Virus record (IMG/VR): IMGVR_UViG_3300042465_005589 | Coordinates: 1 to 64,000 of that record | Reading direction: 5' to 3' (one strand) | DNA length: 64,000 bases | Shown here: positions 2,801-64,000 of the stretch, one piece after another | Numbering within the stretch: the first letter of the stretch is position 1 | How the letters are laid out: every line of letters begins with the position of its first letter | Program-made: the position numbers and the translations under genes | Notes under the pieces: model-generated | What the model saw: the letters and a program-made list of their open reading frames with translations, nothing else | Told to the model about the DNA's origin: nothing | Databases searched by the model: none

Positions 2801-2862
2801 CTATATGTCTAAAGTTATTTATCCTATAAATACTTGTGAAATCAGTATTTACTCAACAAACT

Positions 2863-2899: not shown

Positions 2900-2906
2900 A
2901 TATTTG

Positions 2907-3766: not shown

Positions 3767-3767
3767 A

Positions 3768-4010: not shown

Positions 4011-4034
4011 TTTTTTTCAGTTTTAATTTTTTTA

Positions 4035-4997
4035 TTAGTCATTGAAAACATAAAATGTTAATGTGCTATTAGCACAGAACTGAGTTTCAAGATTTGTTGA
4101 CATAGTTAAAATTATGTTCCCACCATCGTCAGAAAACGTACCAAGAAAACTTGTATTAGTATCTGTATTCAATACGGTAACAACTTCAGATATGTCATTA
4201 ACAATAGTACCACCACTTGTGTAAAAAGATTGAATAAACATATCTCCACAATAAAACTCAACACTTACATTTGTGAAAGGAAATGATGTTGTAGTTCCAC
4301 TTATTACTGTTGGTGTGGTATCTAAATCTTGTAGAATTTGAATTTCAATCGAGTAGTAGTATAAACTATTGTCAACTGGTTCAGGAACACTTAAATCAAC
4401 AACAAAAAGAATAATACTATCGTCTTTCTCATTAAAATTATTAGGAAATATAAAAGTTTCTATTGGGTTAGGTCCAAAAATGGGTGTTTGATTCCCACCT
4501 AGAAGGAATGTTGAATTTCTATTAAAAGTATTATACAGTGGGCCTGTAGTTGAATTAAACCCTACATAAACTCCTGTAAAATCCTTAATCCACTCAATAT
4601 CGAATCCCAAGTTATTTTCTAATACTGTTACCACTAAAGTAGCACTAGATACTAAAGTAGAACCGTTATTCCAATTTGTTGGGGTTTCCCCTGTTGCAAT
4701 GAATATACATCCCGTTGTGTCTATAACTCCACTTGTTACATTAGCAATATTACTAAAACTATCACCACTAACATAATTGACTATCGTGTAAGTTTCACCT
4801 ATAATAAAACCACCATTAAGACCACCAAAATCATTTAAGGTTGTGCCGGTCTGAGAACCTATATCAGTTAATAACGCTTTGTAAGTCGCCAAATTTCCTG
4901 TTGTTACACCTGTAACACTTAAATTCCCATTTATGGTTACATTACCATTTATCGTTTGCCCCGATAAATTATCTACAATATATTTTGTTCTTGCCAT
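4035..4997 (-). CDS. putative virion fibre/structural protein
   Basis: T/G/N-rich, fibre-like TINGNVTINGNLSVTG repeat. Confidence 0.55.
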   Translation of the reverse strand: MARTKYIVDNLSGQTINGNVTINGNLSVTGVTTGNLATYKALLTDIGSQTGTTLNDFGGLNGGFIIGETYTIVNYVSGDSFSNIANVTSGVIDTTGCIFIATGETPTNWNNGSTLVSSATLVVTVLENNLGFDIEWIKDFTGVYVGFNSTTGPLYNTFNRNSTFLLGGNQTPIFGPNPIETFIFPNNFNEKDDSIILFVVDLSVPEPVDNSLYYYSIEIQILQDLDTTPTVISGTTTSFPFTNVSVEFYCGDMFIQSFYTSGGTIVNDISEVVTVLNTDTNTSFLGTFSDDGGNIILTMSTNLETQFCANSTLTFYVFND

Positions 4998-4999
4998 TA

Positions 5000-7600: not shown

Positions 7601-7638
7601 AATTTGTTTTTTATTTTATAAATATTTTTAATTTTATT

Positions 7639-8133
7639 TTAATACATTAAATAAAAATTATCACCAACAATAATATATTCATCATTTTCAGTTATAATTG
7701 GATTAATTAAAATGTCAATTGGTGTTGAAGGTGTAGGAGTTGGTGTAGGAGTGCTTGTCAATGTTGGTGTTGGGGTACTTGTAAATGTAGGTGTCGGTGT
7801 GAGTGTTGGAAATGGAACACATTTTGTTTCAGTTGGTGTTGGAGTAGGCGTAGATGTTGGGGTTGGTGTTGGAGTTCTTGTTTGAGTTGGGGTTGGTGTT
7901 GGAGTAGGTCTAACAACATTTAATATATTTGGACATTCAATACCGTTTACAATAACAACAATTGTGTAAACACCATAAACATCTATAGGTGGAGTTAATA
8001 AATAAGGTCTAAACAAAAATGGTAATGTTTGTTGCCCCAAATTAATTACTACATTATCAACATCAGGGGTAAAGATTATATTAGCAATCTCCCCGTCGTA
8101 ATTTATACTATTAATTGTTATTGATTGTGACAT
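7639..8133 (-). CDS. Thr-Pro repeat (mucin-like) structural protein
   Basis: two (TP)n tracts; C-terminal [12 protein letters not shown] motif. Confidence 0.6.
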
Positions 8134-8150: not shown

Positions 8151-10376
8151 TTATATTATTGTTGTTGTAACAGGAATTGTCGTTGTTGTTGTGGTTGAAA
8201 TATTCCCTATTGTGTATGTGAAATCATCCGGAGGACAAATTTCAGTACTACAATCAGGACAATCAGGGTTAAACATTCTAAACGTATTTTTCAATATATT
8301 AAAATTGTGTTTAACTTCCGGAGCCGATAATGGTGTTACATACATTCTAAATTGAGAAATACCCCCTTCAAATGTTCCTGCGAAATTTTGTTCAATAACA
8401 ATATTTGTATTCATTCCATTAAATGTAGTTCCCGTTAAATCATTAACAGGAAAACATTCAGGGTCTTGTTGATATGGTCCATAAGGTAATGTACAAGATG
8501 AAAATGTTAAATTTTCTCTCAATCCTTGAGTCCCTCCACCCCATGATATATTAAATGGAACACCAACTTGTTTTTCTTTATCCGTACTTAAAGCTCTTGG
8601 AATAATTTCTTCAAAATCTTCAATCGTGTAAAATATTTTACCATTGATATAAATTTTTAATCTTCCTCTTCTATATTTTTTTTCATCTAACCATCTTTCG
8701 TTTAAATTAACTAATTCAATTTTTGATGGTTCAATACCGTCAGGTTGTGTATAAGGTACTGTAATTAATGATATTGAATTATGTGCCAATGACTCCAAAT
8801 ATTTCTCTTGAGTTATAATCCCCAAACCACCACGATACCATAAATCGCAATCATCTAACCAAGTGTATCTTTCCCATACAGCATCTAATTGAAACCAGTG
8901 TTCTTCTTCTAACCAAGCCGGGTTATCAACTAAACAAGTTGGGTAAATTCCACCAGGAGAACAATATTCTGTTACCGTATACCCTGTAGTATATGTAATT
9001 CCACTAGTTGAACAACTTCCACTAGTTTCACACCCTCCTGTAAATCTTAAAACTTTAACACCTATCTGAGGATTTTTAGGGTCTCCACATAATTTAAACG
9101 ATAATGCGTTTGACATCGCATCATATAATGGATTTGTCTCACACGTATACTCTATTGACGTAAACCCTGTTGGTTTACAGGTTAAACAATTTCCAAAATC
9201 ATAACATGTTGAACAACTATAACAAGTGTTAGTACACACAGGCGTTACAGAGTCACAATTTGTTGGTGTTGATGTTGGACTCGGAGTAGGTGTAGGTGTA
9301 GGTTCTATAATTGAACCACAAGTATGAGTTTGACATTCCCAACCACAAGTTTCACATGGACCTAAATTACAATCACAACCACAGGTTATTTTTTGTTGAG
9401 GGTTACCGTTACACTCATCACAACCATAATTAACGTGTGGGTCATGAATATTATCTAAAGACCTTGGCGGATATACGTAGATACATCGACTATTAGTTAT
9501 TGTTCTATTACAACACGCACAAGTTTGAATACAATTATATAAATCTGAAGTTACACGAGTATATCCTGTAAAACAATTAGGGTGACCATCGGCATGATGA
9601 TAAAATTTATTTTCAGCTCTTGCCCCTAAATAAAAAAATATGTTTTTATTCTGAGGATAAATCTCGTTTAATGTTGTTTCATCTGATGATGGTGCGTATT
9701 CGTTGTATAATCTTGGTTTTAATAACATTTCAACAGACCATCCTCTGTTCATTCTTTCGGGAAATATTTCATAGTCATACCCAAATAACTTATAGAAACC
9801 TTGATAAAAACCTCCATATAATTCATGGTATCTACCTTCATAAGGACTATACTTACTTACAACTTCATATAAAACAGTTTTATTAAATCCTGAAAATCTA
9901 ACATTAGGTGATTGAGTATTACCTGTAACTTGGAATAATTTTAATCTTCTATCAAAATGTAATCTATCAAATTTTAAATAATCTGAAAATATTCCTTCTG
10001 TAAAAGTTATAGTTTCTCCGGTCATTTTGGTCACTAAACCATTATCAATTCCTGTTAACCCTATATCACAAGATGTGTGAGAATTAAAACAAGTTATATC
10101 CAATTCTTTAGGGTTATAATAATTTTGAGAAACAAAAATATTGTTTTGATTATAACTTTTATAATTTAATGTTAAATCTTGAACACAAGAAGGGTTATCA
10201 ATGTCAAAATAAAATGGTAATCTATTACCATAGGTCTGAGCAATCAAATATGGGGAGAACACAACCTCTTGATTGTAGTCTCTTTCATCGGATGTTATAG
10301 ACATATCATAGGATTCTAAAGCAAAATTTAGACCCCAATTTGGATAGACGTATTGATTTATATTTTGTTGTGCCAT
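8151..10376 (-). CDS. Cys-rich putative virion protein (possible interrupted LamG/concanavalin-like fold)
   Basis: WSVEMLLKP...LKIYING...FEGGISQFRMY...LSAPEV LamG-like strands flanking a Cys-rich, PTPTP-containing insert. Confidence 0.55.
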   Translation of the reverse strand: MAQQNINQYVYPNWGLNFALESYDMSITSDERDYNQEVVFSPYLIAQTYGNRLPFYFDIDNPSCVQDLTLNYKSYNQNNIFVSQNYYNPKELDITCFNSHTSCDIGLTGIDNGLVTKMTGETITFTEGIFSDYLKFDRLHFDRRLKLFQVTGNTQSPNVRFSGFNKTVLYEVVSKYSPYEGRYHELYGGFYQGFYKLFGYDYEIFPERMNRGWSVEMLLKPRLYNEYAPSSDETTLNEIYPQNKNIFFYLGARAENKFYHHADGHPNCFTGYTRVTSDLYNCIQTCACCNRTITNSRCIYVYPPRSLDNIHDPHVNYGCDECNGNPQQKITCGCDCNLGPCETCGWECQTHTCGSIIEPTPTPTPSPTSTPTNCDSVTPVCTNTCYSCSTCYDFGNCLTCKPTGFTSIEYTCETNPLYDAMSNALSFKLCGDPKNPQIGVKVLRFTGGCETSGSCSTSGITYTTGYTVTEYCSPGGIYPTCLVDNPAWLEEEHWFQLDAVWERYTWLDDCDLWYRGGLGIITQEKYLESLAHNSISLITVPYTQPDGIEPSKIELVNLNERWLDEKKYRRGRLKIYINGKIFYTIEDFEEIIPRALSTDKEKQVGVPFNISWGGGTQGLRENLTFSSCTLPYGPYQQDPECFPVNDLTGTTFNGMNTNIVIEQNFAGTFEGGISQFRMYVTPLSAPEVKHNFNILKNTFRMFNPDCPDCSTEICPPDDFTYTIGNISTTTTTTIPVTTTII

Positions 10377-28630: not shown

Positions 28631-29379
28631 TGAATGAAAATATTAATTTAACAGGAGATACAAATGTTGAGTTAAAAAAGAAAGGTAGAAAACCAACACA
28701 AGCAAATTATTTTGATGTTAGAGAAGAATTAGCTGTAGTCAGATTTTTAGAATCATCCTCGTATGAAGAAAAAAATAAGATTTACAACGAATTTTTAAAA
28801 AAACCTTTAGACAAGATGATATCTTCAATTATTAGAAGATACAAATTATATAGAAAAGACATGGATTTCACTGATATACATGTAGACACTCACTCGTTTT
28901 TAATGACTAAAATAGATAAGTTTAAACCTTCTCGTGAAAAGAAGGCTTATTCTTATTTTGGTACAATATGTAAAAACTATTTAATGGGTCAAATCATTAA
29001 AGACCAAAAAGAAACCAATAGAAAAATATCGTATGAAGATATTTCATCAAATTTAGAAAATAATGAAAACTTCGCGTATTATATTGAGAATGATAGTTTA
29101 GATTCTGAAAAAGTTATTAAACACTTTTTAATTGAATTAGAGAGATTTATCAAGGAAGAAAATTTATCGGAAAATGAGATTAAACTAGGTCACGCTCTTT
29201 ATGATATTTTTGAAAATTACGATTCAATATTTATTGGAAATGATAATAACAAATTTAATAAAAATATTATTTTATTGTCTTTAAGAGAGATGACTAATCT
29301 TTCAACAAAAGAAATTAGAGGGTCAATGAGAAAATACAAAAATATGTATTACACATTGATTCAAAATATGGTTAATTAA
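28630..29379 (+). CDS. putative late-transcription sigma factor (T4 gp55-like)
   Basis: NYF...; KFKPSREKKAYSYFGTICKNYL resembles sigma region 2 of gp55 (FDP...AYFTQI). Confidence 0.6.
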   Translation: MNENINLTGDTNVELKKKGRKPTQANYFDVREELAVVRFLESSSYEEKNKIYNEFLKKPLDKMISSIIRRYKLYRKDMDFTDIHVDTHSFLMTKIDKFKPSREKKAYSYFGTICKNYLMGQIIKDQKETNRKISYEDISSNLENNENFAYYIENDSLDSEKVIKHFLIELERFIKEENLSENEIKLGHALYDIFENYDSIFIGNDNNKFNKNIILLSLREMTNLSTKEIRGSMRKYKNMYYTLIQNMVN

Positions 29380-55424: not shown

Positions 55425-56174
55425 TTATTTTTTAAATAAACACCTTTCTTTTAAAGAAAGGGTTTTGTCGGTGTAGTTTGTTTGAAAGTCAAACAATTTT
55501 TGTATATAACCATTTCTTCTTAATGTTTTAAATACCAAATTTTCGTTTGAATACTCACCCCCATCTTCAAGACCTCTAGTTCTATATTTTTTAAGTTTAT
55601 CTTTAAATTTATTAATAATATTATTTGAACTTTCTAATGAAGATTCATCTTCCGCATCGGTAATAACATCGTCAATCATTTTCATCCATTCTTGGGACTT
55701 ATTTTTGATTAATGTTGTATCAATTTCAACATCTTCTTTTTTTGGTTTGGTTATCCATTCATTCAATAACACTGAGTACTCACCACTACTAGTGTGAGGT
55801 TCAGTTGTGTTTTGAACATATAATTCAACATCATAACCAAAAATTGTAATATTATGTTTATCGTTAAATAATGTTTTTTTTAATCGAAACAATTCCTCAT
55901 ATAAAGGTAATTCTTTTTCAGAAAATTGTTTAAAGTCTACAAGAATATGTAAATCAACATCGGAATACTGTGACCAATTATAATTAGATAAAGACCCGGT
56001 CATAACAACATCGTCAACAATCATATCAACACCAATGAAATCAATAAATTCGTAAGCTATTTGCAACAAACGTTCCCTAACCTTTGGGGACATCTCATCG
56101 GATGATTTCCAAATTTTAGGGTTTAACTCATCTTGTAGATGAAAGCTAGACAATATACTTTTTAAGTTACTCAT
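55425..56174 (-). CDS. Pol-beta superfamily nucleotidyltransferase
   Basis: TGSLSNYNW...SDVDLH, DVELY; late motif 56180-56186. Confidence 0.8.
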   Translation of the reverse strand: MSNLKSILSSFHLQDELNPKIWKSSDEMSPKVRERLLQIAYEFIDFIGVDMIVDDVVMTGSLSNYNWSQYSDVDLHILVDFKQFSEKELPLYEELFRLKKTLFNDKHNITIFGYDVELYVQNTTEPHTSSGEYSVLLNEWITKPKKEDVEIDTTLIKNKSQEWMKMIDDVITDAEDESSLESSNNIINKFKDKLKKYRTRGLEDGGEYSNENLVFKTLRRNGYIQKLFDFQTNYTDKTLSLKERCLFKK

Positions 56175-56204
56175 TATCAATAAATACTTAAAAATGTATA
56201 ATTG

Positions 56205-56447
56205 TTAAACTTTTTTGTATTTGAATTTTTTAGATATATCTGTAGTAAAGTATTTCCCTTGAGAATCAGCTAATCTAAATTTGGTATAAACATTATGAGG
56301 TACATCTTCATATTCATATTTCGTCCCATTTTTAAATTCCGCAATCATTTTTTTAGTTGATGTATCGTACTCAGTTCTTACGATGTTTGTTGACTCAATC
56401 TCATTAATGATTTTAGTCCCGTTTATTATTTCTCTTTTTACTGCCAT
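56205..56447 (-). CDS. KTSC-domain protein
   Basis: ESTNI....YD......EFKNG..YEY..VP..VY..F..A.SQGKYF. Confidence 0.85.
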   Translation of the reverse strand: MAVKREIINGTKIINEIESTNIVRTEYDTSTKKMIAEFKNGTKYEYEDVPHNVYTKFRLADSQGKYFTTDISKKFKYKKV

Positions 56448-56745
56448 TTCCTAAAGGTGTTTTTAAGTCGATTATTTTTAGTTTATCCATAAGATAATCA
56501 TTAAACTCATTAAGGTCAACATCACCGAAAAAACTTCTTATTTCAGAAAATATTCTATCTTTCGACCTTGAAAATTTTTGGAAATTACCCATAATATCGG
56601 TTGGGTAATATGGGGGACTTTTTAAATCATCATCGCTCCACCCCTCTCGTTGGAATGCCTTACGTAAATTGTAGTAAGTATCAATTAGTTCATTATCAAC
56701 ACCTAATGTATCAATATACTTCATCCAATGTTTTTTATGTGTCAT
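56413..56745 (-). CDS. hypothetical protein
   Basis: 110 aa; late motif 56750-56756. Confidence 0.6.
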   Translation of the reverse strand: MTHKKHWMKYIDTLGVDNELIDTYYNLRKAFQREGWSDDDLKSPPYYPTDIMGNFQKFSRSKDRIFSEIRSFFGDVDLNEFNDYLMDKLKIIDLKTPLGNGSKKRNNKRD

Positions 56746-56770: not shown

Positions 56771-56801
56771 TTTGTACACTCAATATTTTACATTACTTTT
56801 G
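56771..56801 (+). promoter_or_regulatory. Bacteroidota sigma-A promoter (-33/-7) for the Clp gene
   Basis: TTTG 56771-56774, 19-nt spacer, TACTTTTG 56794-56801. Confidence 0.7.
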
Positions 56802-56856
56802 TGGAATCATTTGAGAAAATGAATTTAATACTTATACTTAATTAAAACAATAAATT

Positions 56857-58905
56857 ATGACAGAACCTATGGATGGTGGAAGTAACGGTGGAAATAATAA
56901 ATCAGTTAAGACTGATTCATCAACACCTGTATTAGACAATTTTAGTAGAGACCTTATTAAATTAGCCGAACAAGGAAAACTTGACCCGGTAATTGGTAGA
57001 GAAAGGGAAATCACTAGAATTGCTCAGATTCTTTCACGTAGAAAGAAAAATAACCCAATCATTATTGGTGAACCTGGTTGTGGTAAAACAGCAATCGTTG
57101 AAGGTCTTGCCATTATGATTTATAATGGGGAATGTCCAAGAAACTTAATGGACAAACGTATCGTATCATTAGATATGACATCAATTGTTGCCGGAACCAA
57201 ATATCGTGGACAATTTGAGGAAAGAATGAAAGTTATCATTGAAGAACTTCAAAACGAACCTAACATTATCGTATTCATTGACGAAATCCACACAATAGTT
57301 GGTGCAGGAAATTCATCAGGTTCAATGGATGCGTCTAACATCTTTAAACCAGCACTTGCTCGTGGTGAGATTCAATGTGTTGGAGCAACAACCTTAGACG
57401 AATATCGAAAAAACTTTGAGAAAGACGGAGCGTTAGAAAGACGTTTTCAAAAAGTTGTTGTGGATTCAGCAACCAAAGAAGAAACTTTGGAAATCCTTAA
57501 AAACGTAAAAGACAAATACGAGAACTTCCATAAGGTAACTTATACGGATGAAGTATTGTCTGTATGTGTTGATTTGGCTGACCGTTATATCACTGACAGA
57601 GAATTCCCGGATAAAGGTTTTGATATCATTGATGAAGTGGGAGCAAGAAGTCAAGTTGATATTAAGATGCCGGATTCAATTGAGAAATTGAAACAACAAG
57701 CGTCTGATATCAAACAAGAAAAGATTGATGTTGTAAAACAACAACGATATGAAGAAGCTGCGAACTTACGTGATAAAGAAAAACGTATCTTAACCAAACT
57801 TGAGACTGAAAAGAAAAAGTTTGAAGAAGAACTTCTTACTCACAAAAAAGAAATCACATTAGATTTAGTTTATGAGGTTGTGTCTAACATGACCAAAATT
57901 CCGGTAACCAAATTAAATGCTGATGAGACCAAACTATTATCTGAGATGGAGGCAAACCTATCTGATAAAGTTATTGGACAATCTGAAGCCGTTTCAAAGA
58001 TTGCTAAGTCAATCCGTAGAAACAGAATTGGTATTAAGGACCCGAACAAACCAATCGGTTCATTTATCTTCTTAGGTTCAACAGGTGTTGGTAAAACATA
58101 CTTGGCGAAACAACTAGCAAAACAAATGTTTGGTAGTGAAGATAATATGATTCGTGTGGATATGTCTGAATACCAAGAAAAACACACCATCTCAAGATTA
58201 ATTGGAGCACCTCCGGGATACGTTGGATACGATGAAGGGGGACAATTAACCGAACAAGTGAAAAACAAACCTTATTCTGTAATTCTATTTGATGAGATTG
58301 AGAAAGCTAACAAAGATATCTTCTCAACACTTCTTCAAGTATTAGACGACGGTCACCTTACCGATGGTATGGGGAGAAAGATTAACTTCAAAAATTGTGT
58401 CATCATTATGACCTCTAATGTTGGAGCTAAAAAATTACAAGATTTTGGTTCAGGAGTTGGTTTTAAAACCGGAACAAGCACTTATGCTGATGAAGAATAC
58501 AAACGTGATGTTCTTAAAAAAGAACTTAAGAAATTCTTCACACCGGAATTCTTAAACAGAATTGATGAGGTTGTTATCTTTAACACCCTAATTAAAGATG
58601 ATGTTAAGAAAATTGTGAAATTGGAATTAGACAAACTATCTAAAAGATTAGTTGGTTTGAAATACGATATTACATTTGATGATACCATTTTAGACCTAAT
58701 CTCTGAAGTTGGATTTGATGAGACCTACGGGGCTAGACCAATCAAAAGAGCAATCCAAGATAAAATTGAGGATTTTGTGTCCGAAGAAATTATCAAAGGA
58801 AATATGGTGGAGGGTGTTCCATACACCCTTATATCCGTAGAGAAAGAAGTGGTAGTTAAACCGGAAGTTGTTAAAAAGACAAGAAAGAAAAAAGAGGACA
58901 TATAG
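56857..58905 (+). CDS. clpC: ClpC-like AAA+ unfoldase lacking the N-terminal domain
   Basis: two AAA modules ([13 protein letters not shown]; [15 protein letters not shown]), UVR-like middle domain ([11 protein letters not shown]), ClpP-docking loop GVGF. Confidence 0.88.
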
Positions 58906-58918
58906 TCCTCTTTTTTTT
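58888..58918. terminator. bidirectional intrinsic terminator
   Basis: aaaaaagaggac-atata-gtcctctttttttt. Confidence 0.85.
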
Positions 58919-58919
58919 A

Positions 58920-59741
58920 TTAAAATGATTTAAAATACTTACTGTCAACTTTAAACGGGTACTTTTTATATCCCAACCCCTCAATCATCTTTTTACCTGT
59001 CTCTATTCCACTATAAACATCTTCAACAACAACATACTCATTTGGGGTGTGATAGTTGTAATAACCTATCGCAAAATTGATACAGGAGAAATCAAAGATA
59101 TTCTTTAATGCGTAAACATCAGTATATGGATGTGATTGATAATCATGTCTCCCATTAAATCCTTCATTCAATGCAACATCACAAATATTAAAGAATTCAC
59201 CACCTCTTTCAAACAGTTGTGTCCCCATACAATATTCGCTTACCATAACATTTCCCGGAGCGTCAAACTGAATACCGTATCCAACATTTAAAAAGAAATT
59301 TGGGTCGGCTTTTTTGGACCCATGACATCCGGTTTCTTCTGATACAAAGAAAGCGGCTTTTAAATTTGGTAATTCTTTCAATAGTTCCAAACAAGCAAAA
59401 ACTCCACATTTATCGTCTCCCCCAATACCAGTTGGGTGTCCGAAATGATTATAAGCCTTTAACGATGGTTTAGGTATTTTTTGTTCATTTGGTAATATTT
59501 CCTCACGAATAATAATATTGTCTAAAGAGTGAACAGTATCTGTATGTGCAATAACACAAGGAAAGTAATCAATAAATTCGTCCGTTTGTTTAACAGCGTA
59601 AATATTTTTATGTTCGTCCACATTGAAGGGAATCCCATTTTGTTCTAACCAATTGATTAGAAATTCTACCATAAGGTCTTCTTGATAAGTTTTTGTCGGG
59701 ACCGACAAGACTTGTTTTAATAATTCATAATCTTTTTCCAT
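58920..59741 (-). CDS. M20/M28-clan zinc peptidase-like protein
   Basis: AHTDTV, GGDDKCG, EETGCHGS, YTD, YHTPNE. Confidence 0.8.
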   Translation of the reverse strand: MEKDYELLKQVLSVPTKTYQEDLMVEFLINWLEQNGIPFNVDEHKNIYAVKQTDEFIDYFPCVIAHTDTVHSLDNIIIREEILPNEQKIPKPSLKAYNHFGHPTGIGGDDKCGVFACLELLKELPNLKAAFFVSEETGCHGSKKADPNFFLNVGYGIQFDAPGNVMVSEYCMGTQLFERGGEFFNICDVALNEGFNGRHDYQSHPYTDVYALKNIFDFSCINFAIGYYNYHTPNEYVVVEDVYSGIETGKKMIEGLGYKKYPFKVDSKYFKSF

Positions 59742-59745
59742 AACG

Positions 59746-59753
59746 CAAATATA
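59746..59753 (-). promoter_or_regulatory. Bacteroidota sigma-A -7 element
   Basis: TATATTTG on minus strand, 4 nt before ATG 59741. Confidence 0.6.
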
Positions 59754-59783
59754 GGGAAAATAATTAAAAATTTAAAGATAACA

Positions 59784-61148
59784 TTAATTTATTCTAATAA
59801 ATCCTTCAAATAATTCAGGAGAAACTAAAAAATTATTAAATTCTTCTTCAGTGTAACTTCTATCTTCCATACCACCATCTTTTTTAAAAACTTGAACAAT
59901 TATTTTATTTGTTGCCGGGTCAATTTTTCTAATAAAAAACTCTCTACCTGATTTAGTTTTATATCTATTATTCATTTTATAATTTTGAGCAATTCGGTTA
60001 TATAATTCTGAATATCCATGAATATCGGCAAACTCATCAGAATCCTCTATTTTTTCAAATATTTTATCTAATTGTTTTTCAACGACATTATTATAATATA
60101 CCTCATCAAAGTCTTCACAATATATCTCCCATCTATTTTCGTCCCATCCACCAATATTACTATCTCTGTGTCCAATATCTTTAAGTAAATCATATAAACT
60201 TAATGTTTTATCCCCAACACTATTATATATTGATAATAATATACCTACTGTGGTATAATATTCTCTAAAACAATTTTGTCTAATTAATCCATAATTTGAA
60301 AAATAATCACAAACATCTCCTTCTATCCATTTTTCAGCCCCTTTATTTTTACAAGCATTTTCTTCATTAACCCAATCACTAAGTATATAATCGATTTCGT
60401 TCGGAAACATACTTTCAACCGTTTTTGATGCCGCCGATTTTACTTCATCATTTTCCAAATTAGCCACACCTGGACTAATAAGTTTTAGTATTTGTTTAAA
60501 TTTAATAAGATTTTCGTCGGAAAAAGAATGTATTAAATAACCTTCATCCCATTCATTCGATGCGTGGTCGTAATCAACAAAATCAAACATCCCATAATCA
60601 GAATAGACTGATTCCGCAAACGAAATATCGTATTCATCAAGTTCAAATAATTTTAAGTAATCTTCCATTTCATCAAAAGAAAGTTTAACCATACTTTTAT
60701 TTGGATTTTTTTCGTTATATATAAATTTCCAAATAAGACTATCAGCCCTTTCCATTTGATTAGTAGTCACTTTTTCACCGTTTTTAACCGCTAACAATAA
60801 TTTGTACACATCTGATTGTCCAACAATATTATCAATAACTGATTTAACCTCATCCGGTAAATCTGACTCAAATTCATGACGATTCATTTCTCTATGTCTA
60901 CGAACTTCACTACCATAATATTCTATTTTATTATCTTGTGTTTTATGAATAACTGATGTTTGGATTGGCTCCTTATCTTTATCTATAATAAAGTAAGTGT
61001 CCCCCTCTCTATACTTATTCCACTCAGATTTATAGTTTTCCGGAGCGTAATATACAAAGGAATCGTAATCCAATGGGTCTACGACCATCCAATCTTCATT
61101 ATCTAATAGTATGTTTTTTGTTCCGTTAAAGTCCTTCGTATCAGGCAT
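59784..61148 (-). CDS. hypothetical acidic protein
   Basis: 454 aa; late motif 61166-61172. Confidence 0.65.
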   Translation of the reverse strand: MPDTKDFNGTKNILLDNEDWMVVDPLDYDSFVYYAPENYKSEWNKYREGDTYFIIDKDKEPIQTSVIHKTQDNKIEYYGSEVRRHREMNRHEFESDLPDEVKSVIDNIVGQSDVYKLLLAVKNGEKVTTNQMERADSLIWKFIYNEKNPNKSMVKLSFDEMEDYLKLFELDEYDISFAESVYSDYGMFDFVDYDHASNEWDEGYLIHSFSDENLIKFKQILKLISPGVANLENDEVKSAASKTVESMFPNEIDYILSDWVNEENACKNKGAEKWIEGDVCDYFSNYGLIRQNCFREYYTTVGILLSIYNSVGDKTLSLYDLLKDIGHRDSNIGGWDENRWEIYCEDFDEVYYNNVVEKQLDKIFEKIEDSDEFADIHGYSELYNRIAQNYKMNNRYKTKSGREFFIRKIDPATNKIIVQVFKKDGGMEDRSYTEEEFNNFLVSPELFEGFIRIN

Positions 61149-61180
61149 TGATATTTATTTTAATAATAAATATAATTTTA

Positions 61181-61211
61181 TTTGGATTTATCCAAAAATG
61201 TATTATCTTTG
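61181..61211 (+). promoter_or_regulatory. Bacteroidota sigma-A promoter for tmRNA
   Basis: TTTG 61181-61184, 19-nt spacer, TATCTTTG 61204-61211. Confidence 0.7.
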
Positions 61212-61225
61212 TGGTATCAAAATAT

Positions 61226-61619
61226 GGGAGTGACACGGAATTGACTATTCGTAATAGTTATTCGGGGCACGTAGTGAGATGTTCTCTATCACTTAAATCT
61301 ATGGGTACAACAATTTAGACGGAAACGTTTTAAACAAAATGGCTCTAGTAGGTCTTGTACGTCAAGATGAGCTTGTGAACGTAGCGTAAGCAAACACACA
61401 TTGGGGTCGGTGGACATATAACCCAGCAACAGGAGTCCTTAAAAAGGTGTGGTACCTATCCGAAAAGGTACAAGTGGAGGATTAGTTCTCAGTAAACCGA
61501 ACCACTCTAAAAATAAGGGAATTGTGAAATTTTGGATTGTTAGCTTAAACAATATCCTAAACGTGTAGTCCTTAATAGGTAATACAAGTAACACCGGAGT
61601 TCGAGTCTCCGCACTTCCA
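61226..61619 (+). ncRNA. ssrA: tmRNA
   Basis: 5' GGGAGTG pairs with 3' CACTTCC (G3-U alanine determinant), discriminator A; GGAATTGAC D-loop analogue; T-arm CGGAG-TTCGAGT-CTCCG; tag ORF 61321-61389; smpB nearby; CCA not encoded. Confidence 0.93.
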
Positions 61620-61626
61620 CAAAAAG

Positions 61627-61654
61627 AAAAACCCATCATACGATGGGTTTTTTT
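61627..61654. terminator. bidirectional intrinsic terminator
   Basis: aaaacccatc-atac-gatgggttttttt. Confidence 0.85.
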
Positions 61655-61678
61655 GTTATCAGTTCAAATGTTTATTTT

Positions 61679-62038
61679 TTAATCTTGTAATAAATCCTTT
61701 GTTACCGGATTTAATTTAGTTACTAATTTATCTAATCTTGAATCAATAGTTCTATATACCTCATCAAGACCTTTGTTTGTATCCTCAGCTCTAGCATTTA
61801 TATATCTATTGGTCTCAGCATACAATTCGTCGGTTCGTTTAATCTCACCATCTATACGACGATGTAGGTCATCACCTGTTCTATTTATTTCTGTGAAGAT
61901 GTGTCCTTGTACTTGTTCCAATTGGGAACATTTATTTTTTAATCTTTTAATCTGAATGTACATCATAACCACAACTCCAACTCCCAGTACCCCGAGAACC
62001 AAAACTATACCCATAATGAACGATGTTAAATCTACCAT
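61679..62038 (-). CDS. single-TM coiled-coil membrane protein
   Basis: N-terminal hydrophobic helix FIMGIVLVLGVLGVGVVVMMYI followed by heptads. Confidence 0.7.
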   Translation of the reverse strand: MVDLTSFIMGIVLVLGVLGVGVVVMMYIQIKRLKNKCSQLEQVQGHIFTEINRTGDDLHRRIDGEIKRTDELYAETNRYINARAEDTNKGLDEVYRTIDSRLDKLVTKLNPVTKDLLQD

Positions 62039-62078
62039 AATTTCTTTTTTTTTATTTGTTTATTATTGAACTGATAAT

Positions 62079-62459
62079 TTATTGTTTAACTCCTCCCCAC
62101 AAATAACCATCACCATATGAAGTACATATTTCTTCACCGGGTTGGATTGTTTGTAAAGAGTAAAATTGAAATGCTCGTTTAGTTGGGTGATTTCTCCACA
62201 TTGCGTTATTAGTATCTGAATGATTATATATACATCCATACCCTAATGGTATCACATATTCAGTCCAATTTGGTCCTTGAGGATAACAAAATCTATAATC
62301 ATCAAGTAATCTTGATTGTTCCCATTTTTTTGTTGGTAAAGTCACTAAATGACATTCTTCAATCAACTCATCTTTTTCAATGACATCAATTGCAAATACC
62401 CCCATTCCTTTTCCTGGAGAGGGTTTAATCTCTATTTTGGTCGGTATTAATAAATTCAT
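62079..62459 (-). CDS. SET-domain protein (putative lysine methyltransferase)
   Basis: GKGMGVFA, YNHS, I.PGEEICTSYG. Confidence 0.88.
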   Translation of the reverse strand: MNLLIPTKIEIKPSPGKGMGVFAIDVIEKDELIEECHLVTLPTKKWEQSRLLDDYRFCYPQGPNWTEYVIPLGYGCIYNHSDTNNAMWRNHPTKRAFQFYSLQTIQPGEEICTSYGDGYLWGGVKQ

Positions 62460-62473
62460 AAGTAAATTATAAT

Positions 62474-62502
62474 AAAAAAAGAGACTATTTCAAGTCTCTT
62501 TT
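62474..62502 (-). terminator. intrinsic terminator after smpB
   Basis: aaaaaaagagact...agtctctttt. Confidence 0.7.
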
Positions 62503-62922
62503 CATATCTCTTTCAATGTCCCGAGATTTAATACTGTCTCGTTTATCGTATGTCTTCTTTCCTTTGGCAAGAGCAATCTCCATCTTAACTAACCCGGTAT
62601 CATTTATGAATACACGATAAGGAACGATGGTGGTTCCGTTGATTAGTTCGTTCTCCAATTTATTAAGTTCTTTTCGTTTAAGTAATAGTTTTCTATCCTT
62701 TACGGTCTCGTGAAAGGACCCGAACCCATAATCAGAGATATTCATTCCCTTTATAAACAACTCACCATTGTTGAAGTAACAAAACCCCTCAGATATGGAG
62801 ACCTTTCCCTGACGGATGGACTTTACCTCTGAACCAACTAGTTTGATTCCCACGATTAGTGTCTGTAGGAATGAATACTCAAACTTGGCTTTCTTATTGA
62901 CTATGTTAATTGATTTTTTCAT
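62485..62922 (-). CDS. smpB: SsrA-binding protein SmpB
   Basis: NKKAKFEY, GIKLVGSEVKSIR, RKLLL, ALAKGKKTYDKR. Confidence 0.96.
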   Translation of the reverse strand: MKKSINIVNKKAKFEYSFLQTLIVGIKLVGSEVKSIRQGKVSISEGFCYFNNGELFIKGMNISDYGFGSFHETVKDRKLLLKRKELNKLENELINGTTIVPYRVFINDTGLVKMEIALAKGKKTYDKRDSIKSRDIERDMKRDLK

Positions 62923-62926
62923 ACGA

Positions 62927-62934
62927 CAAAGATA
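62927..62934 (-). promoter_or_regulatory. Bacteroidota sigma-A -7 element
   Basis: TATCTTTG on minus strand, 4 nt before smpB ATG. Confidence 0.6.
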
Positions 62935-62999: not shown

Positions 63000-63152
63000 A
63001 TGAACCCAAGAAAAAAAGAAGAAGATAAAAAAGTAAAATTTGGAATCTGTGTTGACCCGGTAATATACCAAAAAATGGAAGATGAGATGATTAACAAATC
63101 TCGCCTGATTGAAACACTATTGAAAGAACATTATGGAAAAAAAAGTTTGTAG
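63000..63152 (+). CDS. small ribbon-helix-helix-like protein (50 aa, missing from ORF track)
   Basis: MNPRKKEEDKKVKFGICVDPVIYQKMEDEMINKSRLIETLLKEHYGKKSL; late motif 62979-62985; overlaps HNH start. Confidence 0.6.
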   Translation: MNPRKKEEDKKVKFGICVDPVIYQKMEDEMINKSRLIETLLKEHYGKKSL

Positions 63153-63753
63153 TAAGTGTAAAGAAGAAAAAGAGGTTTGCGAGTTTGGGAAACGAAAAGA
63201 TTCCAAAGATGGTCTGCGAAGTGAATGTAAAAGTTGTGCTAAAGAATGGAGATTAAAGAATCGAGAACATTTATTAAAATATAATAAAAATTGGAAAAAT
63301 TCTAATTCAGAACACGTTTATCATTATCATAAAAAATATAAAGAAGAAAATGATGAAGAATTAAAGAAATATCAAAAAGAATGGTATCTACAAAATAAAA
63401 ATATTCTTAATGAAAAAATAAAACTAAAAAAATTAACAAACCCAATATTTTTAGTTTCGTGTTCAGTTAGAAAAAGAATGTCCGAGTATATTAAAAAAAA
63501 TAATATATTGAAAAAAAATAAAACTTTTAAAGTTGTTGGATTGAACCCTATTGAATTATCTCATTACTTGGAAACTCAATTTACAGAAGGAATGTCTTGG
63601 AATAACTATGGAAAGTATGGGTGGCATATTGACCATATAATTCCGTTATCTTCAGCAAAAAATGAAAATGAACTTTATAAGTTATGTCATTATACTAATC
63701 TCCAACCACTATGGGCAGAAGACAATCTAAAAAAATCAAATAAACTATTATAA
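63133..63753 (+). CDS. HNH endonuclease (putative homing endonuclease)
   Basis: CSKC...CKSC zinc finger, K/E-rich spacer, WHIDHIIP...HYTNLQPLWAEDNLKK. Confidence 0.88.
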   Translation: MEKKVCSKCKEEKEVCEFGKRKDSKDGLRSECKSCAKEWRLKNREHLLKYNKNWKNSNSEHVYHYHKKYKEENDEELKKYQKEWYLQNKNILNEKIKLKKLTNPIFLVSCSVRKRMSEYIKKNNILKKNKTFKVVGLNPIELSHYLETQFTEGMSWNNYGKYGWHIDHIIPLSSAKNENELYKLCHYTNLQPLWAEDNLKKSNKLL

Positions 63754-63756
63754 ACA

Positions 63757-63791
63757 AAAAAAGGTGTCACAAATTAATGTAACACCTTTTT
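63757..63791. terminator. bidirectional intrinsic terminator
   Basis: aaaaaaggtgt...acaccttttt. Confidence 0.8.
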
Positions 63792-63794: not shown

Positions 63795-64000
63795 TTAATA
63801 CGATGAGAATACTCGTCTTATTGAGAATCTTCGGAAGGATTATTGTTTCCCTTCTTTTCCACCATCTTTTGAATGGTAATCCTCATTGCCGATTGGTTAG
63901 ACCAATCACTCCTTAAGATATCATTTACTCTCTCATTATTCAACTCTCTTTAACCTTGCGAGCTAACTCCGGATTCGACTCCGTAGAGGTTTTTGGCGAG
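63795..64000 (-). ncRNA. 3' part of a large structured RNA, possibly GOLLD-like (continues beyond window)
   Basis: GC-richer non-coding stretch with serial hairpins (63834-63854, 63861-63877, 63891-63907), CUCGCAAGG GNRA loop, two UUCUCA motifs, ends at a terminator; family assignment from memory only. Confidence 0.5.

What the first reader, a model, noticed from the sequence alone, without database searches (positions are those of the whole stretch)
56771..62934. Co-regulated ribosome-rescue and proteolysis block: ClpC, peptidase, tmRNA, SET, SmpB
Seen: within about 6 kb lie clpC, an M20/M28 peptidase, ssrA, a SET protein and smpB. Four of them (clpC, peptidase, ssrA, smpB) have TAnnTTTG host-type promoter elements, suggesting simultaneous early expression. 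Known: large phages can carry tmRNA and SmpB. Inference: a full tag-unfold-degrade pathway that could counter host defences that cleave mRNA/tRNA and stall ribosomes.
Basis: partly seen in the sequence, partly recalled or inferred. Interest (0 to 1): 0.7.

Follow-up and report, generated by a model that had tools for sequence, protein, structure and literature searches.

The report
Phage ribosome-rescue and Clp protease block
A 318-kb freshwater phage that probably infects Bacteroidota carries its own ribosome-rescue RNA and protein (tmRNA, SmpB) beside its own Clp unfoldase and a small peptidase, all behind host-type promoters; the parts are real and conserved, but that they work as one pathway is still inference.

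Summary
All five named genes are at the stated coordinates, and the four TAnnTTTG elements are real promoters. Two have the full Bacteroidota -33/-7 form. Two sit exactly 4 nt before the ATG, which predicts leaderless mRNAs. Their positions are kept in relatives.

The order NTase-orf80-orf110-ClpC-peptidase-orf454-tmRNA-orf119-SmpB-GOLLD is kept in 36 of 41 related contigs that can be judged. In one sublineage SmpB and GOLLD lie about 195 kb from ClpC-tmRNA. SET is an accessory insertion, present in only 9 contigs.

Corrections and additions:
- The ClpC lacks the N-terminal domain but keeps both ATPase rings, the M-domain and a VGF ClpP-docking loop.
- The protease partner is not the peptidase. 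It is a true ClpP at 134 kb.
- The tmRNA encodes an unusual 21-22-residue tag ending in V/T-Ala. Bacteroidota bacteria encode GERNYALAA.
- tmRNA and clpC appear in lake RNA libraries; peptidase and smpB barely do.
- An Rnl1-like RNA ligase, a kinase, a phosphoesterase and 23 tRNA genes lie next door.

Coupling of the tag to ClpC, early timing and counter-defence are untested. I rate this a new variant of a known kind, of moderate interest.

The parts
55425..56180 (-). NTase251: Pol-beta-type nucleotidyltransferase-like protein on the conserved left flank of the block. Function unknown.
   Evidence: Pfam NTP_transf_2, E=0.0025, below the cut-off; PHROG 36119, E=5.6e-46. G-S and D-x-D residues are invariant in 13 homologues. 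Syntenic in relatives. The AlphaFold2 model was unusable, pLDDT 54.
56205..56745 (-). orf80 (56205-56447) and orf110 (56413-56745): small conserved ORFs divergent from clpC.
   Evidence: Syntenic in relatives, including G003. No family match for orf110; orf80 was not scanned.
56771..56801 (+). clpC promoter: -33 TTTG, 19-nt spacer, -7 TACTTTTG, followed by a conserved 55-nt leader.
   Evidence: Full-consensus hit. The motif and leader are kept in 14 of 20 distinct upstream sequences. Sequence read.
56857..58905 (+). ClpC-like double-ring AAA+ unfoldase without an N-terminal domain.
   Evidence: Aligns to S. aureus ClpC residues 150-800, E=1e-223. Walker A/B of both rings, the KYRG and GYVG pore loops, the M-domain and a G-V-G-F ClpP-docking loop are present. 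AAA_2, AAA_lid_9 and ClpB_D2-small match in Pfam. Cellular relatives carry about 165 extra N-terminal residues. No Clp_N domain anywhere in the genome.
58888..58916 (.). Hairpin terminator at the convergent clpC/peptidase junction.
   Evidence: 12-bp stem followed by a T run.
58920..59741 (-). Small MH-clan (M20/M42-like) metallopeptidase: catalytic domain only.
   Evidence: PHROG 4191 'peptidase', E=9e-36. Pfam M20 22.8 bits, just under the 24.6 cut-off. H66, D109/D110, E135-E136, D160 and H231 are invariant in 15 homologues. The Asp, Glu-Glu and C-terminal His motifs lie in segments that align to PepT-family structures.
59746..59753 (-). Peptidase promoter -7 element TATATTTG, 4 nt before the ATG. 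Predicts a leaderless mRNA.
   Evidence: 18 of 19 distinct upstream sequences keep the motif exactly 4 nt before the ATG; L043 has it farther upstream. Eight genes in the genome have exactly this spacing.
59784..61148 (-). orf454: fast-evolving acidic protein of unknown fold, always between the peptidase and tmRNA.
   Evidence: No Pfam, PHROG or NCBIfam match. Only 21-79% identity among relatives. AlphaFold2 pLDDT 88.9, but no convincing structural match. Upstream motif is TATTTAT, never TAnnTTTG.
61181..61211 (+). tmRNA promoter: -33 TTTG, 19-nt spacer, -7 TATCTTTG, ending 14 nt before the mature 5' end.
61226..61622 (+). tmRNA (ssrA). The tag reading frame is 61321-61389 (resume codon GGA, stop TAA) and encodes 22 residues. 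The gene ends in ACAA, so CCA is not encoded.
   Evidence: Rfam RF00023, 65.7 bits. G3:U is invariant, and 17 of 41 base pairs show compensatory changes. The tag frame is open in all 28 variants, pN/pS 0.44. ARAGORN calls the same frame in three relatives. Depth 100-800 in lake RNA libraries.
61627..61652 (.). Hairpin terminator between tmRNA and orf119. The hairpin has U/T runs on both strands.
61679..62038 (-). orf119: N-terminal transmembrane helix plus coiled coil. Conserved partner of the block, function unknown.
   Evidence: Translation. Only weak family hits. 17 distinct homologues in synteny.
62079..62459 (-). SET-domain methyltransferase: an accessory insertion, not part of the core.
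   Evidence: Pfam SET 49.5 bits. NHS and Tyr motifs visible. Present in only 9 related contigs, which carry 4 distinct SET sequences.
62476..62503 (.). Hairpin terminator overlapping the smpB stop codon.
62485..62922 (-). SmpB, including the C-terminal tail.
   Evidence: Pfam 163.7 bits; NCBIfam equivalogs 158.8 and 156.7 bits, above their cut-offs. Aligns to solved SmpB through the G-K-K-x-Y-D-K-R motif and the tail.
62927..62934 (-). smpB promoter -7 element TATCTTTG, 4 nt before the ATG. No -33 TTTG in this genome.
   Evidence: 22 of 27 distinct upstream sequences keep it, 15 of them with a -33 TTTG.
63133..63753 (+). HNH homing endonuclease: a variable insertion between smpB and GOLLD.
   Evidence: PHROG 1035. 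Present in only about 10 of the related contigs.
63800..64000 (-). 3' part of a GOLLD RNA, which continues to about 64677 beyond the window. Its terminator is at 63758-63791.
   Evidence: Rfam RF02032: 163.6 bits cut by the window end; 306.3 bits full length at genome 63800-64207. Promoter at 64711-64681. Terminator. Depth 1000-8000 in four lake RNA libraries. Adjacent to smpB in relatives.

Best explanation
The window is the start of a complete 318-kb jumbo-phage genome from fresh water. Its promoter type, the Gly resume codon of its tmRNA and its nearest ClpC homologues all point to a Bacteroidota host.

The block is the left edge of a region of about 33 kb (57-89 kb) devoted to keeping translation running. 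It holds a phage tmRNA and SmpB, which form a complete trans-translation pair. Beside them lie a ClpC-type unfoldase without an N-domain and a small dinuclear-metal peptidase. Next come a GOLLD RNA, an Rnl1-like RNA ligase, a PNK-like kinase, a phosphoesterase and 23 tRNA genes.

Proposed mechanism:
1. Host RNA polymerase with the host sigma factor reads the TTTG/TAnnTTTG promoters of clpC, the peptidase, ssrA, smpB and GOLLD. The smpB and peptidase mRNAs are leaderless.
2. SmpB and alanyl-tmRNA enter ribosomes stalled on broken or stop-less mRNAs. They release the ribosome and add a 21-22-residue tag specific to this phage clade, ending in V/T-Ala.
3. The tagged fragments are unfolded by the adaptor-independent phage ClpC, which docks through its VGF loop on the phage ClpP (134 kb) or on host ClpP. 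The resulting peptides are trimmed by the peptidase.

Shown: the identity and integrity of the parts, promoter class, synteny, selection on the tag and on the RNA structure, and presence of tmRNA and clpC in lake RNA libraries.
Inferred: early timing, recognition of the tag by ClpC, and the purpose of the system (ribosome and amino-acid economy, or resistance to RNA-cleaving defences).
For: Parts are intact:
- tmRNA scores 65.7 bits, G3:U is invariant and 17 of 41 pairs show compensatory changes.
- The tag frame is open in all 28 variants, with pN/pS 0.44. Gly1, Lys6, Gly-Leu 11-12, Arg14 and the terminal Ala are invariant, and several of them use different codons in different variants.
- SmpB keeps its tail.
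- ClpC keeps its Walker motifs, pore loops, M-domain and GVGF loop.
- ClpP scores 218 bits against a ClpP equivalog and only 58 bits against the head-maturation protease model. The Ser and His motifs and an Asp at the expected position are present.
- ClpP and ClpC are both present in all four complete relatives.
- The peptidase metal ligands are invariant.

Promoters. In run X5, where GOLLD RNA coverage extends furthest upstream, it ends where such a promoter predicts the start.

Synteny:
- 36 of 41 related contigs that can be judged keep the order.
- NTase-ClpC-peptidase-orf454-tmRNA is kept even in G003, where smpB has moved.
- clpP and smpB are 6 nt apart in a different phage lineage.

Context:
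- An Rnl1-like ligase, a PNK-like kinase and a phosphoesterase lie near smpB in most relatives with enough flanking sequence. The ligase and the kinase also lie near smpB in the distant L060.
- 23 tRNA genes.

Expression: tmRNA depth is 100-800 and clpC 5-240, while the 2 kb between them is silent.

Host:
- The nearest ClpC homologues are in Bacteroidota, at 58% identity.
- Those bacteria's tags also start with Gly.
- E. coli-type promoters are not enriched.
Against: - No experiment or computation links the tag to ClpC. In model bacteria, ssrA-tagged proteins are degraded mainly by ClpXP (textbook knowledge).
- clpP is 72 kb from clpC.
- smpB is unlinked from the block in 5 of 41 contigs.
- The four genes are separate transcription units, and their RNA depths in four lake RNA libraries are very unequal: peptidase and smpB are near zero.
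- orf454 sits in the middle of the block, belongs to another motif class and has no known function.
- Timing was not measured.
- The RNA libraries are contig-based. The silent stretch argues against DNA carry-over but does not exclude it.
Confidence: 0.55

Rival explanations
1. The genes are co-located but not coupled. The region collects cell-derived genes that are read by host polymerase. tmRNA and SmpB simply raise ribosome-rescue capacity, and host ClpXP or other host proteases degrade the tagged products. ClpC, ClpP and the peptidase do something unrelated, such as breaking down host proteins for amino acids or remodelling the proteome.
For: - clpP is 72 kb away.
- smpB can move away without the rest.
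- The genes are separate transcription units on both strands.
- The tag ends in a hydrophobic residue plus Ala, like ordinary degrons. From memory, ssrA tag variants ending in LVA are good ClpXP substrates in E. coli.
- The N-domain-less ClpC has no known means of reading a specific tag.
Against: - The strict adjacency ClpC-peptidase-orf454-tmRNA is kept across relatives whose ClpC identity falls to about 70% (G003) and whose orf454 identity falls to 21%.
- clpP and smpB form an operon-like pair in another lineage.
- The tag is more than twice the length of the host-phylum tag, and its non-C-terminal core is conserved. That suggests a reader other than the terminal-residue pocket.
Confidence: 0.3
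2. Counter-defence is the main role. The block works together with the neighbouring RNA ligase, kinase, phosphoesterase and tRNA genes. It rescues translation when host abortive-infection nucleases (anticodon nucleases, RelE-like or other mRNA interferases) cut tRNA or mRNA.
For: - An Rnl1-like ligase (PHROG 562, E=1e-62), a PNK-like kinase and a phosphoesterase lie 7-11 kb from smpB. They are conserved there in most relatives with enough flanking sequence, and the ligase and the kinase also lie near smpB in the distant L060.
- 23 tRNA genes.
- From memory, T4 Pnkp plus Rnl1 repairs tRNA cut by PrrC.
Against: - The evidence is purely contextual.
- No defence system or target is identified.
- The same genes would help any phage that degrades host mRNA itself.
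- This reading does not exclude the best explanation.
Confidence: 0.3
3. The tag is not a degron. The phage tmRNA releases ribosomes but marks the products with a stable peptide that has a function of its own. Alternatively, the RNA acts mainly as a competitor of host tmRNA-SmpB.
For: - The tag is long, has a conserved internal Gly-Leu-x-Arg core and does not end in Ala-Ala.
- ARAGORN misses 25 of the 28 variants, so the RNA is atypical.
- One mycobacteriophage carries only the tRNA-like domain, which is thought to inhibit trans-translation (PMC4131195).
Against: - The full tmRNA architecture, a complete SmpB with its tail and a hydrophobic C-terminus are all kept.
- The module sits next to an unfoldase and a peptidase.
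Confidence: 0.1

Closest known systems
tmRNA and SmpB genes of huge phages (Al-Shayeb et al. 2020, PMC7162821) and tmRNAs of Bxz1-like mycobacteriophages and Bacillus phage G (PMC4131195)
   Same: Large phages carry ssrA, sometimes with smpB, among tRNA and other translation genes.
   Different: - The pair sits in a fixed arrangement with a ClpC-type unfoldase and a peptidase.
- The tag is 21-22 residues and specific to this clade.
- The promoters are of the Bacteroidota type.
- The tmRNA is missed by ARAGORN, the tool used in the huge-phage survey.
Bacterial ssrA tagging with ClpXP/ClpAP degradation (E. coli, B. subtilis)
   Same: The logic is the same: tag, then unfold, then degrade. The tRNA-like domain has G3:U, SmpB has its tail, and the tag ends in a hydrophobic residue plus Ala.
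   Different: - The unfoldase next to ssrA is ClpC-like, not ClpX, and lacks its N-domain.
- No SspB-like adaptor was recognised.
- Bacteroidota bacteria encode the 9-residue tag GERNYALAA. The phage tag is unrelated to it beyond the first Gly and the last Ala.
ClpC of Firmicutes (S. aureus, B. subtilis; structures 6em8 and 3j3s)
   Same: The phage protein aligns over residues 150-800 at E=1e-223. It has the D1 and D2 rings, the M-domain coiled coil and the VGF loop for ClpP.
   Different: It has no N-terminal Clp_N repeat domain. From textbook knowledge, that domain binds MecA, McsB and phospho-arginine. No Clp_N or ClpS is found anywhere in the phage genome.
T4 Pnkp-Rnl1 tRNA repair against the PrrC anticodon nuclease
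   Same: A phage Rnl1-family ligase with a kinase and a phosphoesterase lies in the same region as the tRNA genes.
   Different: Here they are neighbours of tmRNA-SmpB and GOLLD. Function was not tested, and the kinase and phosphatase are separate small proteins.
GOLLD RNA of phages and prophages near tRNA islands (Weinberg 2009; cryo-EM preprint 10.1101/2024.12.08.627333)
   Same: GOLLD lies next to tRNA genes and an HNH endonuclease, as described before (PMC6582537).
   Different: Here it is directly upstream of smpB and stays with smpB when smpB moves. This link to a ribosome-rescue factor was not mentioned in the papers I read.

Membership tests
tmRNA (Rfam RF00023) | Score above the family gathering threshold, with the full model matched | tested here: met
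   65.7 bits against 47, model positions 1-374. The middle of the RNA (pseudoknots 2-4) aligns poorly.
tmRNA (Rfam RF00023) | tRNA-like domain: 7-bp acceptor stem with G3:U (alanine identity) and a T-arm | tested here: met
   G3:U in 26 of 26 sequences. Acceptor pairs 4, 5 and 7 and all five T-arm pairs show compensatory double changes.
tmRNA (Rfam RF00023) | Tag reading frame after pseudoknot 1, ending in a stop codon and a hydrophobic C-terminus | tested here: met
   Frame 61321-61389. It is open for 21-22 codons in all 28 variants, while the +1 frame closes after 3-9 codons. pN/pS is 0.44. The tag ends in V/T-Ala.
tmRNA (Rfam RF00023) | Aminoacylation by AlaRS and ribosome entry with SmpB and EF-Tu | not testable with these tools
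   The 3' CCA is not encoded here (ACAA) and varies among relatives, so CCA must be added after transcription.
SmpB (PF01668 / TIGR00086) | Full-length match above the curated cut-offs | tested here: met
   Pfam 163.7 bits against 27. NCBIfam equivalogs 158.8 against 130 and 156.7 against 119.1.
SmpB (PF01668 / TIGR00086) | C-terminal tail needed for function in the ribosomal mRNA channel | tested here: met
   Aligns to solved SmpB up to residue 156 of 161, including the G-K-K-x-Y-D-K-R motif and a basic tail.
ClpC (class I Hsp100 that docks on ClpP) | Two AAA+ modules with Walker A/B motifs and pore loops | tested here: met
   alignment; Pfam AAA, AAA_lid_9, AAA_2 and ClpB_D2-small.
ClpC (class I Hsp100 that docks on ClpP) | Short M-domain coiled coil between D1 and D2 | tested here: met
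   Aligns without a gap to S. aureus ClpC 410-460.
ClpC (class I Hsp100 that docks on ClpP) | ClpP-docking loop (I/L/V)-G-(F/L) in D2 | tested here: met
   G-V-G-F near residue 533, aligned to the A-G-F loop of S. aureus ClpC.
ClpC (class I Hsp100 that docks on ClpP) | N-terminal Clp_N repeat domain (site for adaptors and phospho-arginine) | tested here: not met
   The protein starts at the equivalent of residue 150. Upstream lie a promoter and a divergent gene. Eight cellular relatives carry about 165 extra residues. No Clp_N in the genome. It should therefore be filed as ClpC-like, not as canonical ClpC.
ClpP (PF00574) | True ClpP rather than a ClpP-like prohead protease, with the Ser-His-Asp triad | tested here: met
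   Gene at genome 133846-134580. Pfam 176.9 bits. NCBIfam ClpP model 218 bits against 58 bits for the head-maturation model. The Ser (A-S-M-G) and His motifs and an Asp at the expected position are present in the alignment to H. pylori ClpP; which residues form the triad is from memory.
MH-clan metallopeptidase (M20/M28/M42) | Ligands for two metal ions: His, bridging Asp, Glu-Glu, Asp/Glu, His | tested here: met
   H66, D109/D110, E135-E136, D160 and H231 are invariant in 15 sequences. The Asp, Glu-Glu and C-terminal His motifs lie in segments that align to PepT-family structures.
MH-clan metallopeptidase (M20/M28/M42) | Score above the Pfam gathering threshold, and the lid/dimerisation domain of M20 | tested here: not met
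   M20 scores 22.8 bits against 24.6. The protein is 273 aa against 370-420 aa for PepT, and no inserted domain aligns. It is a minimal catalytic domain, and the subfamily is undecided.
Bacteroidota primary-sigma promoter (-33 TTTG / -7 TAnnTTTG) | Both elements, with a spacer of about 19-21 nt, upstream of the gene | tested here: met
   Met for clpC and tmRNA, each with a 19-nt spacer. For smpB and the peptidase only the -7 element is present in this genome; 15 of 27 smpB upstream sequences in relatives also have the -33 element.
Bacteroidota primary-sigma promoter (-33 TTTG / -7 TAnnTTTG) | Transcription starts a few nucleotides downstream of the -7 element | tested here: inconclusive
   Only indirect evidence, and only for the neighbouring GOLLD promoter. 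In one run (X5) coverage of about 2200 extends to the bin 64544-64677 and drops to about 7 beyond it; the -7 element ends at 64681. In the other three runs coverage stops one bin earlier. There is no 5'-end mapping for the four genes of the finding.
SET-domain methyltransferase (PF00856) | Domain match above the cut-off | tested here: met
   49.5 bits against 22.4. N-H-S and a C-terminal Tyr are visible. The substrate is unknown, and the gene is accessory.

The most novel reading that the evidence does not exclude
The phage runs a private degradation channel. Its long, clade-specific tmRNA tag would be a degron read by the phage's own N-domain-less ClpC (perhaps through orf454 or another unrecognised adaptor) together with the phage ClpP. 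Products of stalled ribosomes would then be turned into amino acids independently of host ClpXP. The always-adjacent GOLLD RNA, which forms a cage and was reported to pull down ribosomes, would take part in the same ribosome-rescue process.
Probability: 0.15. Interest if true: 0.8.

Novelty: new variant of a known kind. Interest (0 to 1): 0.55.

Why it matters
Why large phages carry their own tmRNA and SmpB is unknown. This clade offers a concrete case that can be tested.
- The rescue pair is fixed next to an unfoldase and a peptidase.
- Its tag is unlike the tag of the host phylum.
- RNA-repair genes and tRNA genes lie alongside.
- The RNA products are abundant in lakes.

Three practical consequences follow.
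- Surveys that rely on ARAGORN will under-count phage tmRNAs: it missed 25 of the 28 variants here.
- The region gives a clean set of Bacteroidota-type promoters, including a recurrent leaderless arrangement.
- GOLLD, an RNA of unknown function, gains a conserved neighbour (smpB) that suggests where to look for its role.

Tried and rejected
- **Phage database:** megablast of the block against 50,697 phage records found no match.
- **ARAGORN:** it found no tmRNA in the window.
- **Bare motif count:** TAnnTTTG is not enriched in the window, so the bare count was dropped as evidence. I used the full consensus, position and conservation instead.
- **E. coli-type promoters:** the sigma-70 scan gave 38 sites against 36.8 expected, not enriched.
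- **orf454:** no sequence family.
  - The Atlas feature search gave only weak leads, all at or below 0.83. One was a MecA cluster at rank 45 with score 0.78. Pfam and the fold searches did not support it.
  - The model is good (pLDDT 88.9), but nothing convincing came from PDB Foldseek, AlphaFold DB clusters, VIA-align wide (best Z 5.1) or the Atlas (best TM 0.29).
- **Complex prediction:** orf454 with the 22-residue tag gave no answer, score 0.00. This is evidence neither for nor against binding, and the peptide is shorter than anything in the tool's calibration.
- **NTase251:** the AlphaFold2 model had pLDDT 54, so no fold search was done. The profile search of solved structures gave only weak hits to the DrrA nucleotidyltransferase domain, E=0.006.
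- **Idea that the peptidase is the proteolytic partner of ClpC:** rejected. ClpC-type unfoldases dock on ClpP, and a true ClpP exists elsewhere in the genome.
- **Idea that that ClpP is a prohead protease:** rejected on scores, 218 against 58 bits.
- **SET as part of the pathway:** rejected, because it is absent from most relatives.
- **Skipped-segment joints in tmRNA contigs:** not interpreted. They probably come from relatives with divergent middle regions.

Full report
**What the window is**

The window is bases 1-64000 of a 318,164-bp IMG/VR virus record that CheckV rates 100% complete. The genome has 31% G+C and 23 tRNA genes between 65 and 88 kb. It encodes a sigma-70-family protein, and no RNA polymerase beta subunit was found. 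Megablast against 50,697 phage records finds nothing. IMG/VR, however, holds dozens of relatives, several of them genomes of about 280-320 kb. RNA libraries that contain its sequences are almost all freshwater or lake samples.

**The observation**

- ClpC-like ATPase: 56857-58905 (+).
- MH-clan peptidase: 58920-59741 (-).
- tmRNA: 61226-61622 (+), 65.7 bits.
- SET protein: 62079-62459 (-).
- SmpB: 62485-62922 (-).

Two conserved ORFs went unmentioned. orf454 (59784-61148, -) lies between the peptidase and tmRNA. orf119 (61679-62038, -) lies between tmRNA and SET and has one transmembrane helix followed by a coiled coil. ARAGORN does not detect the tmRNA.

**Promoters**

The four TAnnTTTG sites exist, but the bare 8-mer is no more frequent than chance: 105 observed against 112 expected. 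Three other results show the sites are real.

First, the complete Bacteroidota form, TTTG then 18-21 nt then TAnnTTTG, occurs 54 times in the genome against 17.8 +/- 4.3 in Markov simulations. Thirty-one of these lie in the 9% of the genome that is intergenic, usually 4-30 nt before a start codon. The clpC site (56771-56801) and the tmRNA site (61181-61211) are among them, each with a 19-nt spacer.

Second, the sites are kept in relatives.
- 19 of 19 distinct peptidase upstream sequences keep the motif, and 18 of them keep it exactly 4 nt before the ATG.
- 22 of 27 smpB upstream sequences keep it with the same 4-nt spacing, 15 of them with a -33 TTTG as well.
- 14 of 20 clpC upstream sequences keep TACTTTTG plus a conserved 55-nt leader.

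Exactly eight genes in this genome have the 4-nt spacing. From what is known of Bacteroidota promoters, that spacing predicts leaderless or nearly leaderless mRNAs. This is my inference.

Third, a promoter of the same kind at 64711-64681 precedes the GOLLD RNA. In run X5, where RNA coverage extends furthest upstream, depth stays near 2200 up to the bin ending at 64677 and drops to about 7 beyond it. In the other three runs the high coverage stops one bin earlier.

By contrast, orf454, orf119 and the NTase never carry the motif. orf454, orf110 and the NTase carry TATTTAT instead. That motif is present upstream of 107 of 406 genes, against 43 in the reverse-orientation control, and mostly lies within 25 nt of the start codon.

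The phage sigma gene (209549-210349) lies in an operon behind a full host-type promoter. A cascade, host sigma first and phage sigma later, is therefore plausible. It remains an inference.

Hairpin terminators follow clpC and the peptidase (shared), tmRNA, smpB and GOLLD: 10 sites against 3.8 expected. The four elements are therefore separate transcription units of one promoter class, not one operon.

**Conservation**

Using SmpB as a probe, 36 of the 41 close contigs with enough flanking sequence keep this order: GOLLD, SmpB, orf119, tmRNA, orf454, peptidase, ClpC, orf110, orf80, NTase.

SET is present in only 9 contigs, which carry 4 distinct SET sequences. The HNH endonuclease between smpB and GOLLD is present in only about 10 of the related contigs. 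Both are insertions.

In five contigs, including the complete genome G003, smpB with GOLLD lies about 195 kb from ClpC-tmRNA. NTase-orf80-orf110-ClpC-peptidase-orf454-tmRNA stays intact there. There are thus two stable units that are usually adjacent.

In a different phage lineage (L056 and L057, SmpB 54-55% identical), a ClpP gene ends 6 nt before smpB. This is independent evidence that phages link SmpB with Clp proteolysis.

**The tmRNA**

An alignment of 26 sequences gives an invariant G3:U pair. Compensatory changes occur in the acceptor stem, the T-arm, helix 2 and others, in 17 of 41 pairs.

The covariance-model alignment places the resume codon at GGA (61321). The frame runs for 22 codons to TAA. 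ARAGORN calls the same frame in the three relatives it does detect.

Across 28 variants the frame is always open for 21-22 codons. There are 15 coding sequences and 9 peptides, pN/pS is 0.44, and Gly1, Lys6, Gly-Leu 11-12, Arg14 and the terminal Ala are invariant, with different codons used for several of them. The tag always ends in V/T-Ala.

Bacteroidota genomes with the closest ClpC encode GERNYALAA or GERNFALAA. The phage shares the Gly resume codon, but its tag is more than twice as long and otherwise unrelated. The other phage lineage has a 25-residue tag ending in AYAA; I read that frame by hand.

The gene ends in ACAA, and relatives vary at this position. CCA must therefore be added after transcription.

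**The proteins**

SmpB aligns with solved SmpB proteins through the tail.

The ClpC-like protein aligns to S. aureus ClpC residues 150-800 (E=1e-223). Both Walker pairs, both pore loops, the M-domain and a G-V-G-F ClpP-docking loop are present. It has no N-domain. The eight cellular relatives I examined carry about 165 more residues at the N-terminus, and the phage genome has no Clp_N domain and no ClpS. Its nearest cellular relatives are Bacteroidota, at 58% identity.

A true ClpP lies at 133846-134580. It has the Ser and His motifs and an Asp at the expected position. It scores 218 bits on a ClpP equivalog model against 58 bits on the head-maturation model. Each of the four complete relatives has both ClpP and ClpC.

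The peptidase keeps all the residues that bind the two metal ions and the Glu-Glu pair, but it lacks the lid domain of PepT-type enzymes.

orf454 evolves fast, with 21-79% identity among relatives, against 75-98% for ClpC in the syntenic contigs (about 70% in G003). It models confidently but matches no known fold.

**Expression in nature**

In four freshwater RNA libraries, contigs at 90% or higher identity cover these regions:

| Region | Depth |
|---|---|
| tmRNA | 100-800 |
| clpC | 5-240 |
| peptidase and orf454 | near 0 |
| SET and smpB | 0-8 |

GOLLD reaches 1000-8000. The silent 2 kb between two covered regions argues for RNA rather than DNA carry-over. The data are assembled contigs, though, so depths are rough and nothing can be said about timing.

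**Surroundings**

Between 69.9 and 74 kb lie three RNA-repair candidates.
- A T4 Rnl1-type RNA ligase (PHROG 562, E=1e-62).
- A P-loop protein with a weaker match to a polynucleotide-kinase family (its best PHROG is an ATPase family).
- A metallophosphoesterase.

Homing endonucleases are scattered among them. All three occupy the same place in most relatives with enough flanking sequence, and the ligase and the kinase lie within 5 kb of smpB in the distant L060. With the 23 tRNA genes, the block is the edge of a region of about 33 kb concerned with keeping translation going when RNA is damaged.

**Interpretation**

The parts, their integrity, their promoter class and their synteny are shown. 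The remaining steps rest on homology and neighbourhood only:
- that tagged proteins go to the phage ClpC and ClpP;
- that the peptidase finishes the degradation;
- that expression is early;
- that the purpose is counter-defence.

Phage tmRNA and SmpB are already known (PMC7162821, PMC4131195), and so is GOLLD near tRNA islands and HNH genes (PMC6582537, 10.1101/2024.12.08.627333). As far as the papers I searched show, five things are new:
- the fixed pairing with an N-domain-less ClpC and a peptidase;
- the clade-specific long tag;
- the leaderless host-type promoters;
- the constant GOLLD-smpB adjacency;
- the link to RNA-repair genes.

I rate this a new variant of a known kind, of moderate interest.

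Noticed in passing
window 63800-64000 (-), continuing to about 64677 in the genome (L182:1401-2278): A full GOLLD RNA (306 bits) lies directly upstream of smpB, between the tRNA genes and smpB. It stays next to smpB even in genomes where smpB is far from tmRNA (75 nt apart in L029). In four lake RNA libraries its depth is 1000-8000, about ten times that of tmRNA. In run X5, where coverage extends furthest upstream, it ends where the host-type promoter at 64711-64681 predicts the start. This phage clade may be a major source of the 'lake-derived' GOLLD RNAs.
   Followed up: partly
genome 69886-70911, 72444-72827 and 73376-74038 (L189:5886-6911, 8444-8827, 9376-10038), all on the - strand: A T4 Rnl1-type RNA ligase, a P-loop protein with a weaker polynucleotide-kinase-family match and a metallophosphoesterase lie 7-11 kb from smpB. 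They are conserved there in most relatives with enough flanking sequence. The ligase and the kinase also lie within 5 kb of smpB in the distant phage contig L060.
   Followed up: partly
whole genome; within the block, upstream of orf454 (about 61166-61172), orf110 and the NTase: A second, orientation-specific upstream motif, TATTTAT, precedes 107 of 406 genes (43 in the reverse control), mostly within 25 nt of the ATG. It may be the promoter class read with the phage's own sigma-70-like factor (genome 209549-210349), whose operon has a host-type promoter. A weaker sigma-like match lies in the window at 28816-28980.
   Followed up: partly
window 59742-59753 and 62923-62934, plus six other genes in the genome: The arrangement TAnnTTTG-N4-ATG recurs at exactly eight genes. 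It predicts leaderless mRNAs transcribed by host polymerase.
   Followed up: partly
L056:9305-10420 and L057: In another phage lineage clpP and smpB are co-directional neighbours 6 nt apart. The tmRNA of that phage (L097:1501-1881) appears to encode a 25-residue tag ending in AYAA (frame read by hand).
   Followed up: partly
window 61226-61622 and 27 variants in the loci: ARAGORN finds only 3 of the 28 tmRNA variants of this clade, and none in five further phage loci that Rfam detects. Phage surveys that rely on ARAGORN will under-count tmRNAs.
   Followed up: yes
window 1-2000 and the last 200 bases of the genome: Both ends of the record lie in G+C-rich (50%) short tandem repeats of similar type. 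The assembly probably broke inside one repeat-rich gene, so the genome may be circular or circularly permuted.
   Followed up: no
L014:4996-6699, L016:6947-8644, L044:10137-11765: In three relatives orf454 carries a C-terminal extension of about 110 residues that the others lack.
   Followed up: no
L093 (G004:213156-213662, -): One relative has a second, partial copy of the ClpC C-terminal part (80% identity to residues 510-679), interrupted by one TAA. It lies about 2.5 kb from the full gene.
   Followed up: no
window 55425-56180 (-): A conserved Pol-beta-type nucleotidyltransferase-like protein, with invariant G-S and D-x-D, always flanks the block. The phage tmRNA and some relatives do not encode CCA, so a role in RNA 3'-end addition is conceivable, but nothing supports it yet.
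   Followed up: partly
window 63133-63753 (+); genome 66732-67352, 71235-71975, 84182-84649: HNH and GIY-YIG homing-endonuclease genes are scattered through the tRNA/GOLLD/smpB region and differ between relatives. They are a likely cause of the local rearrangements.
   Followed up: no
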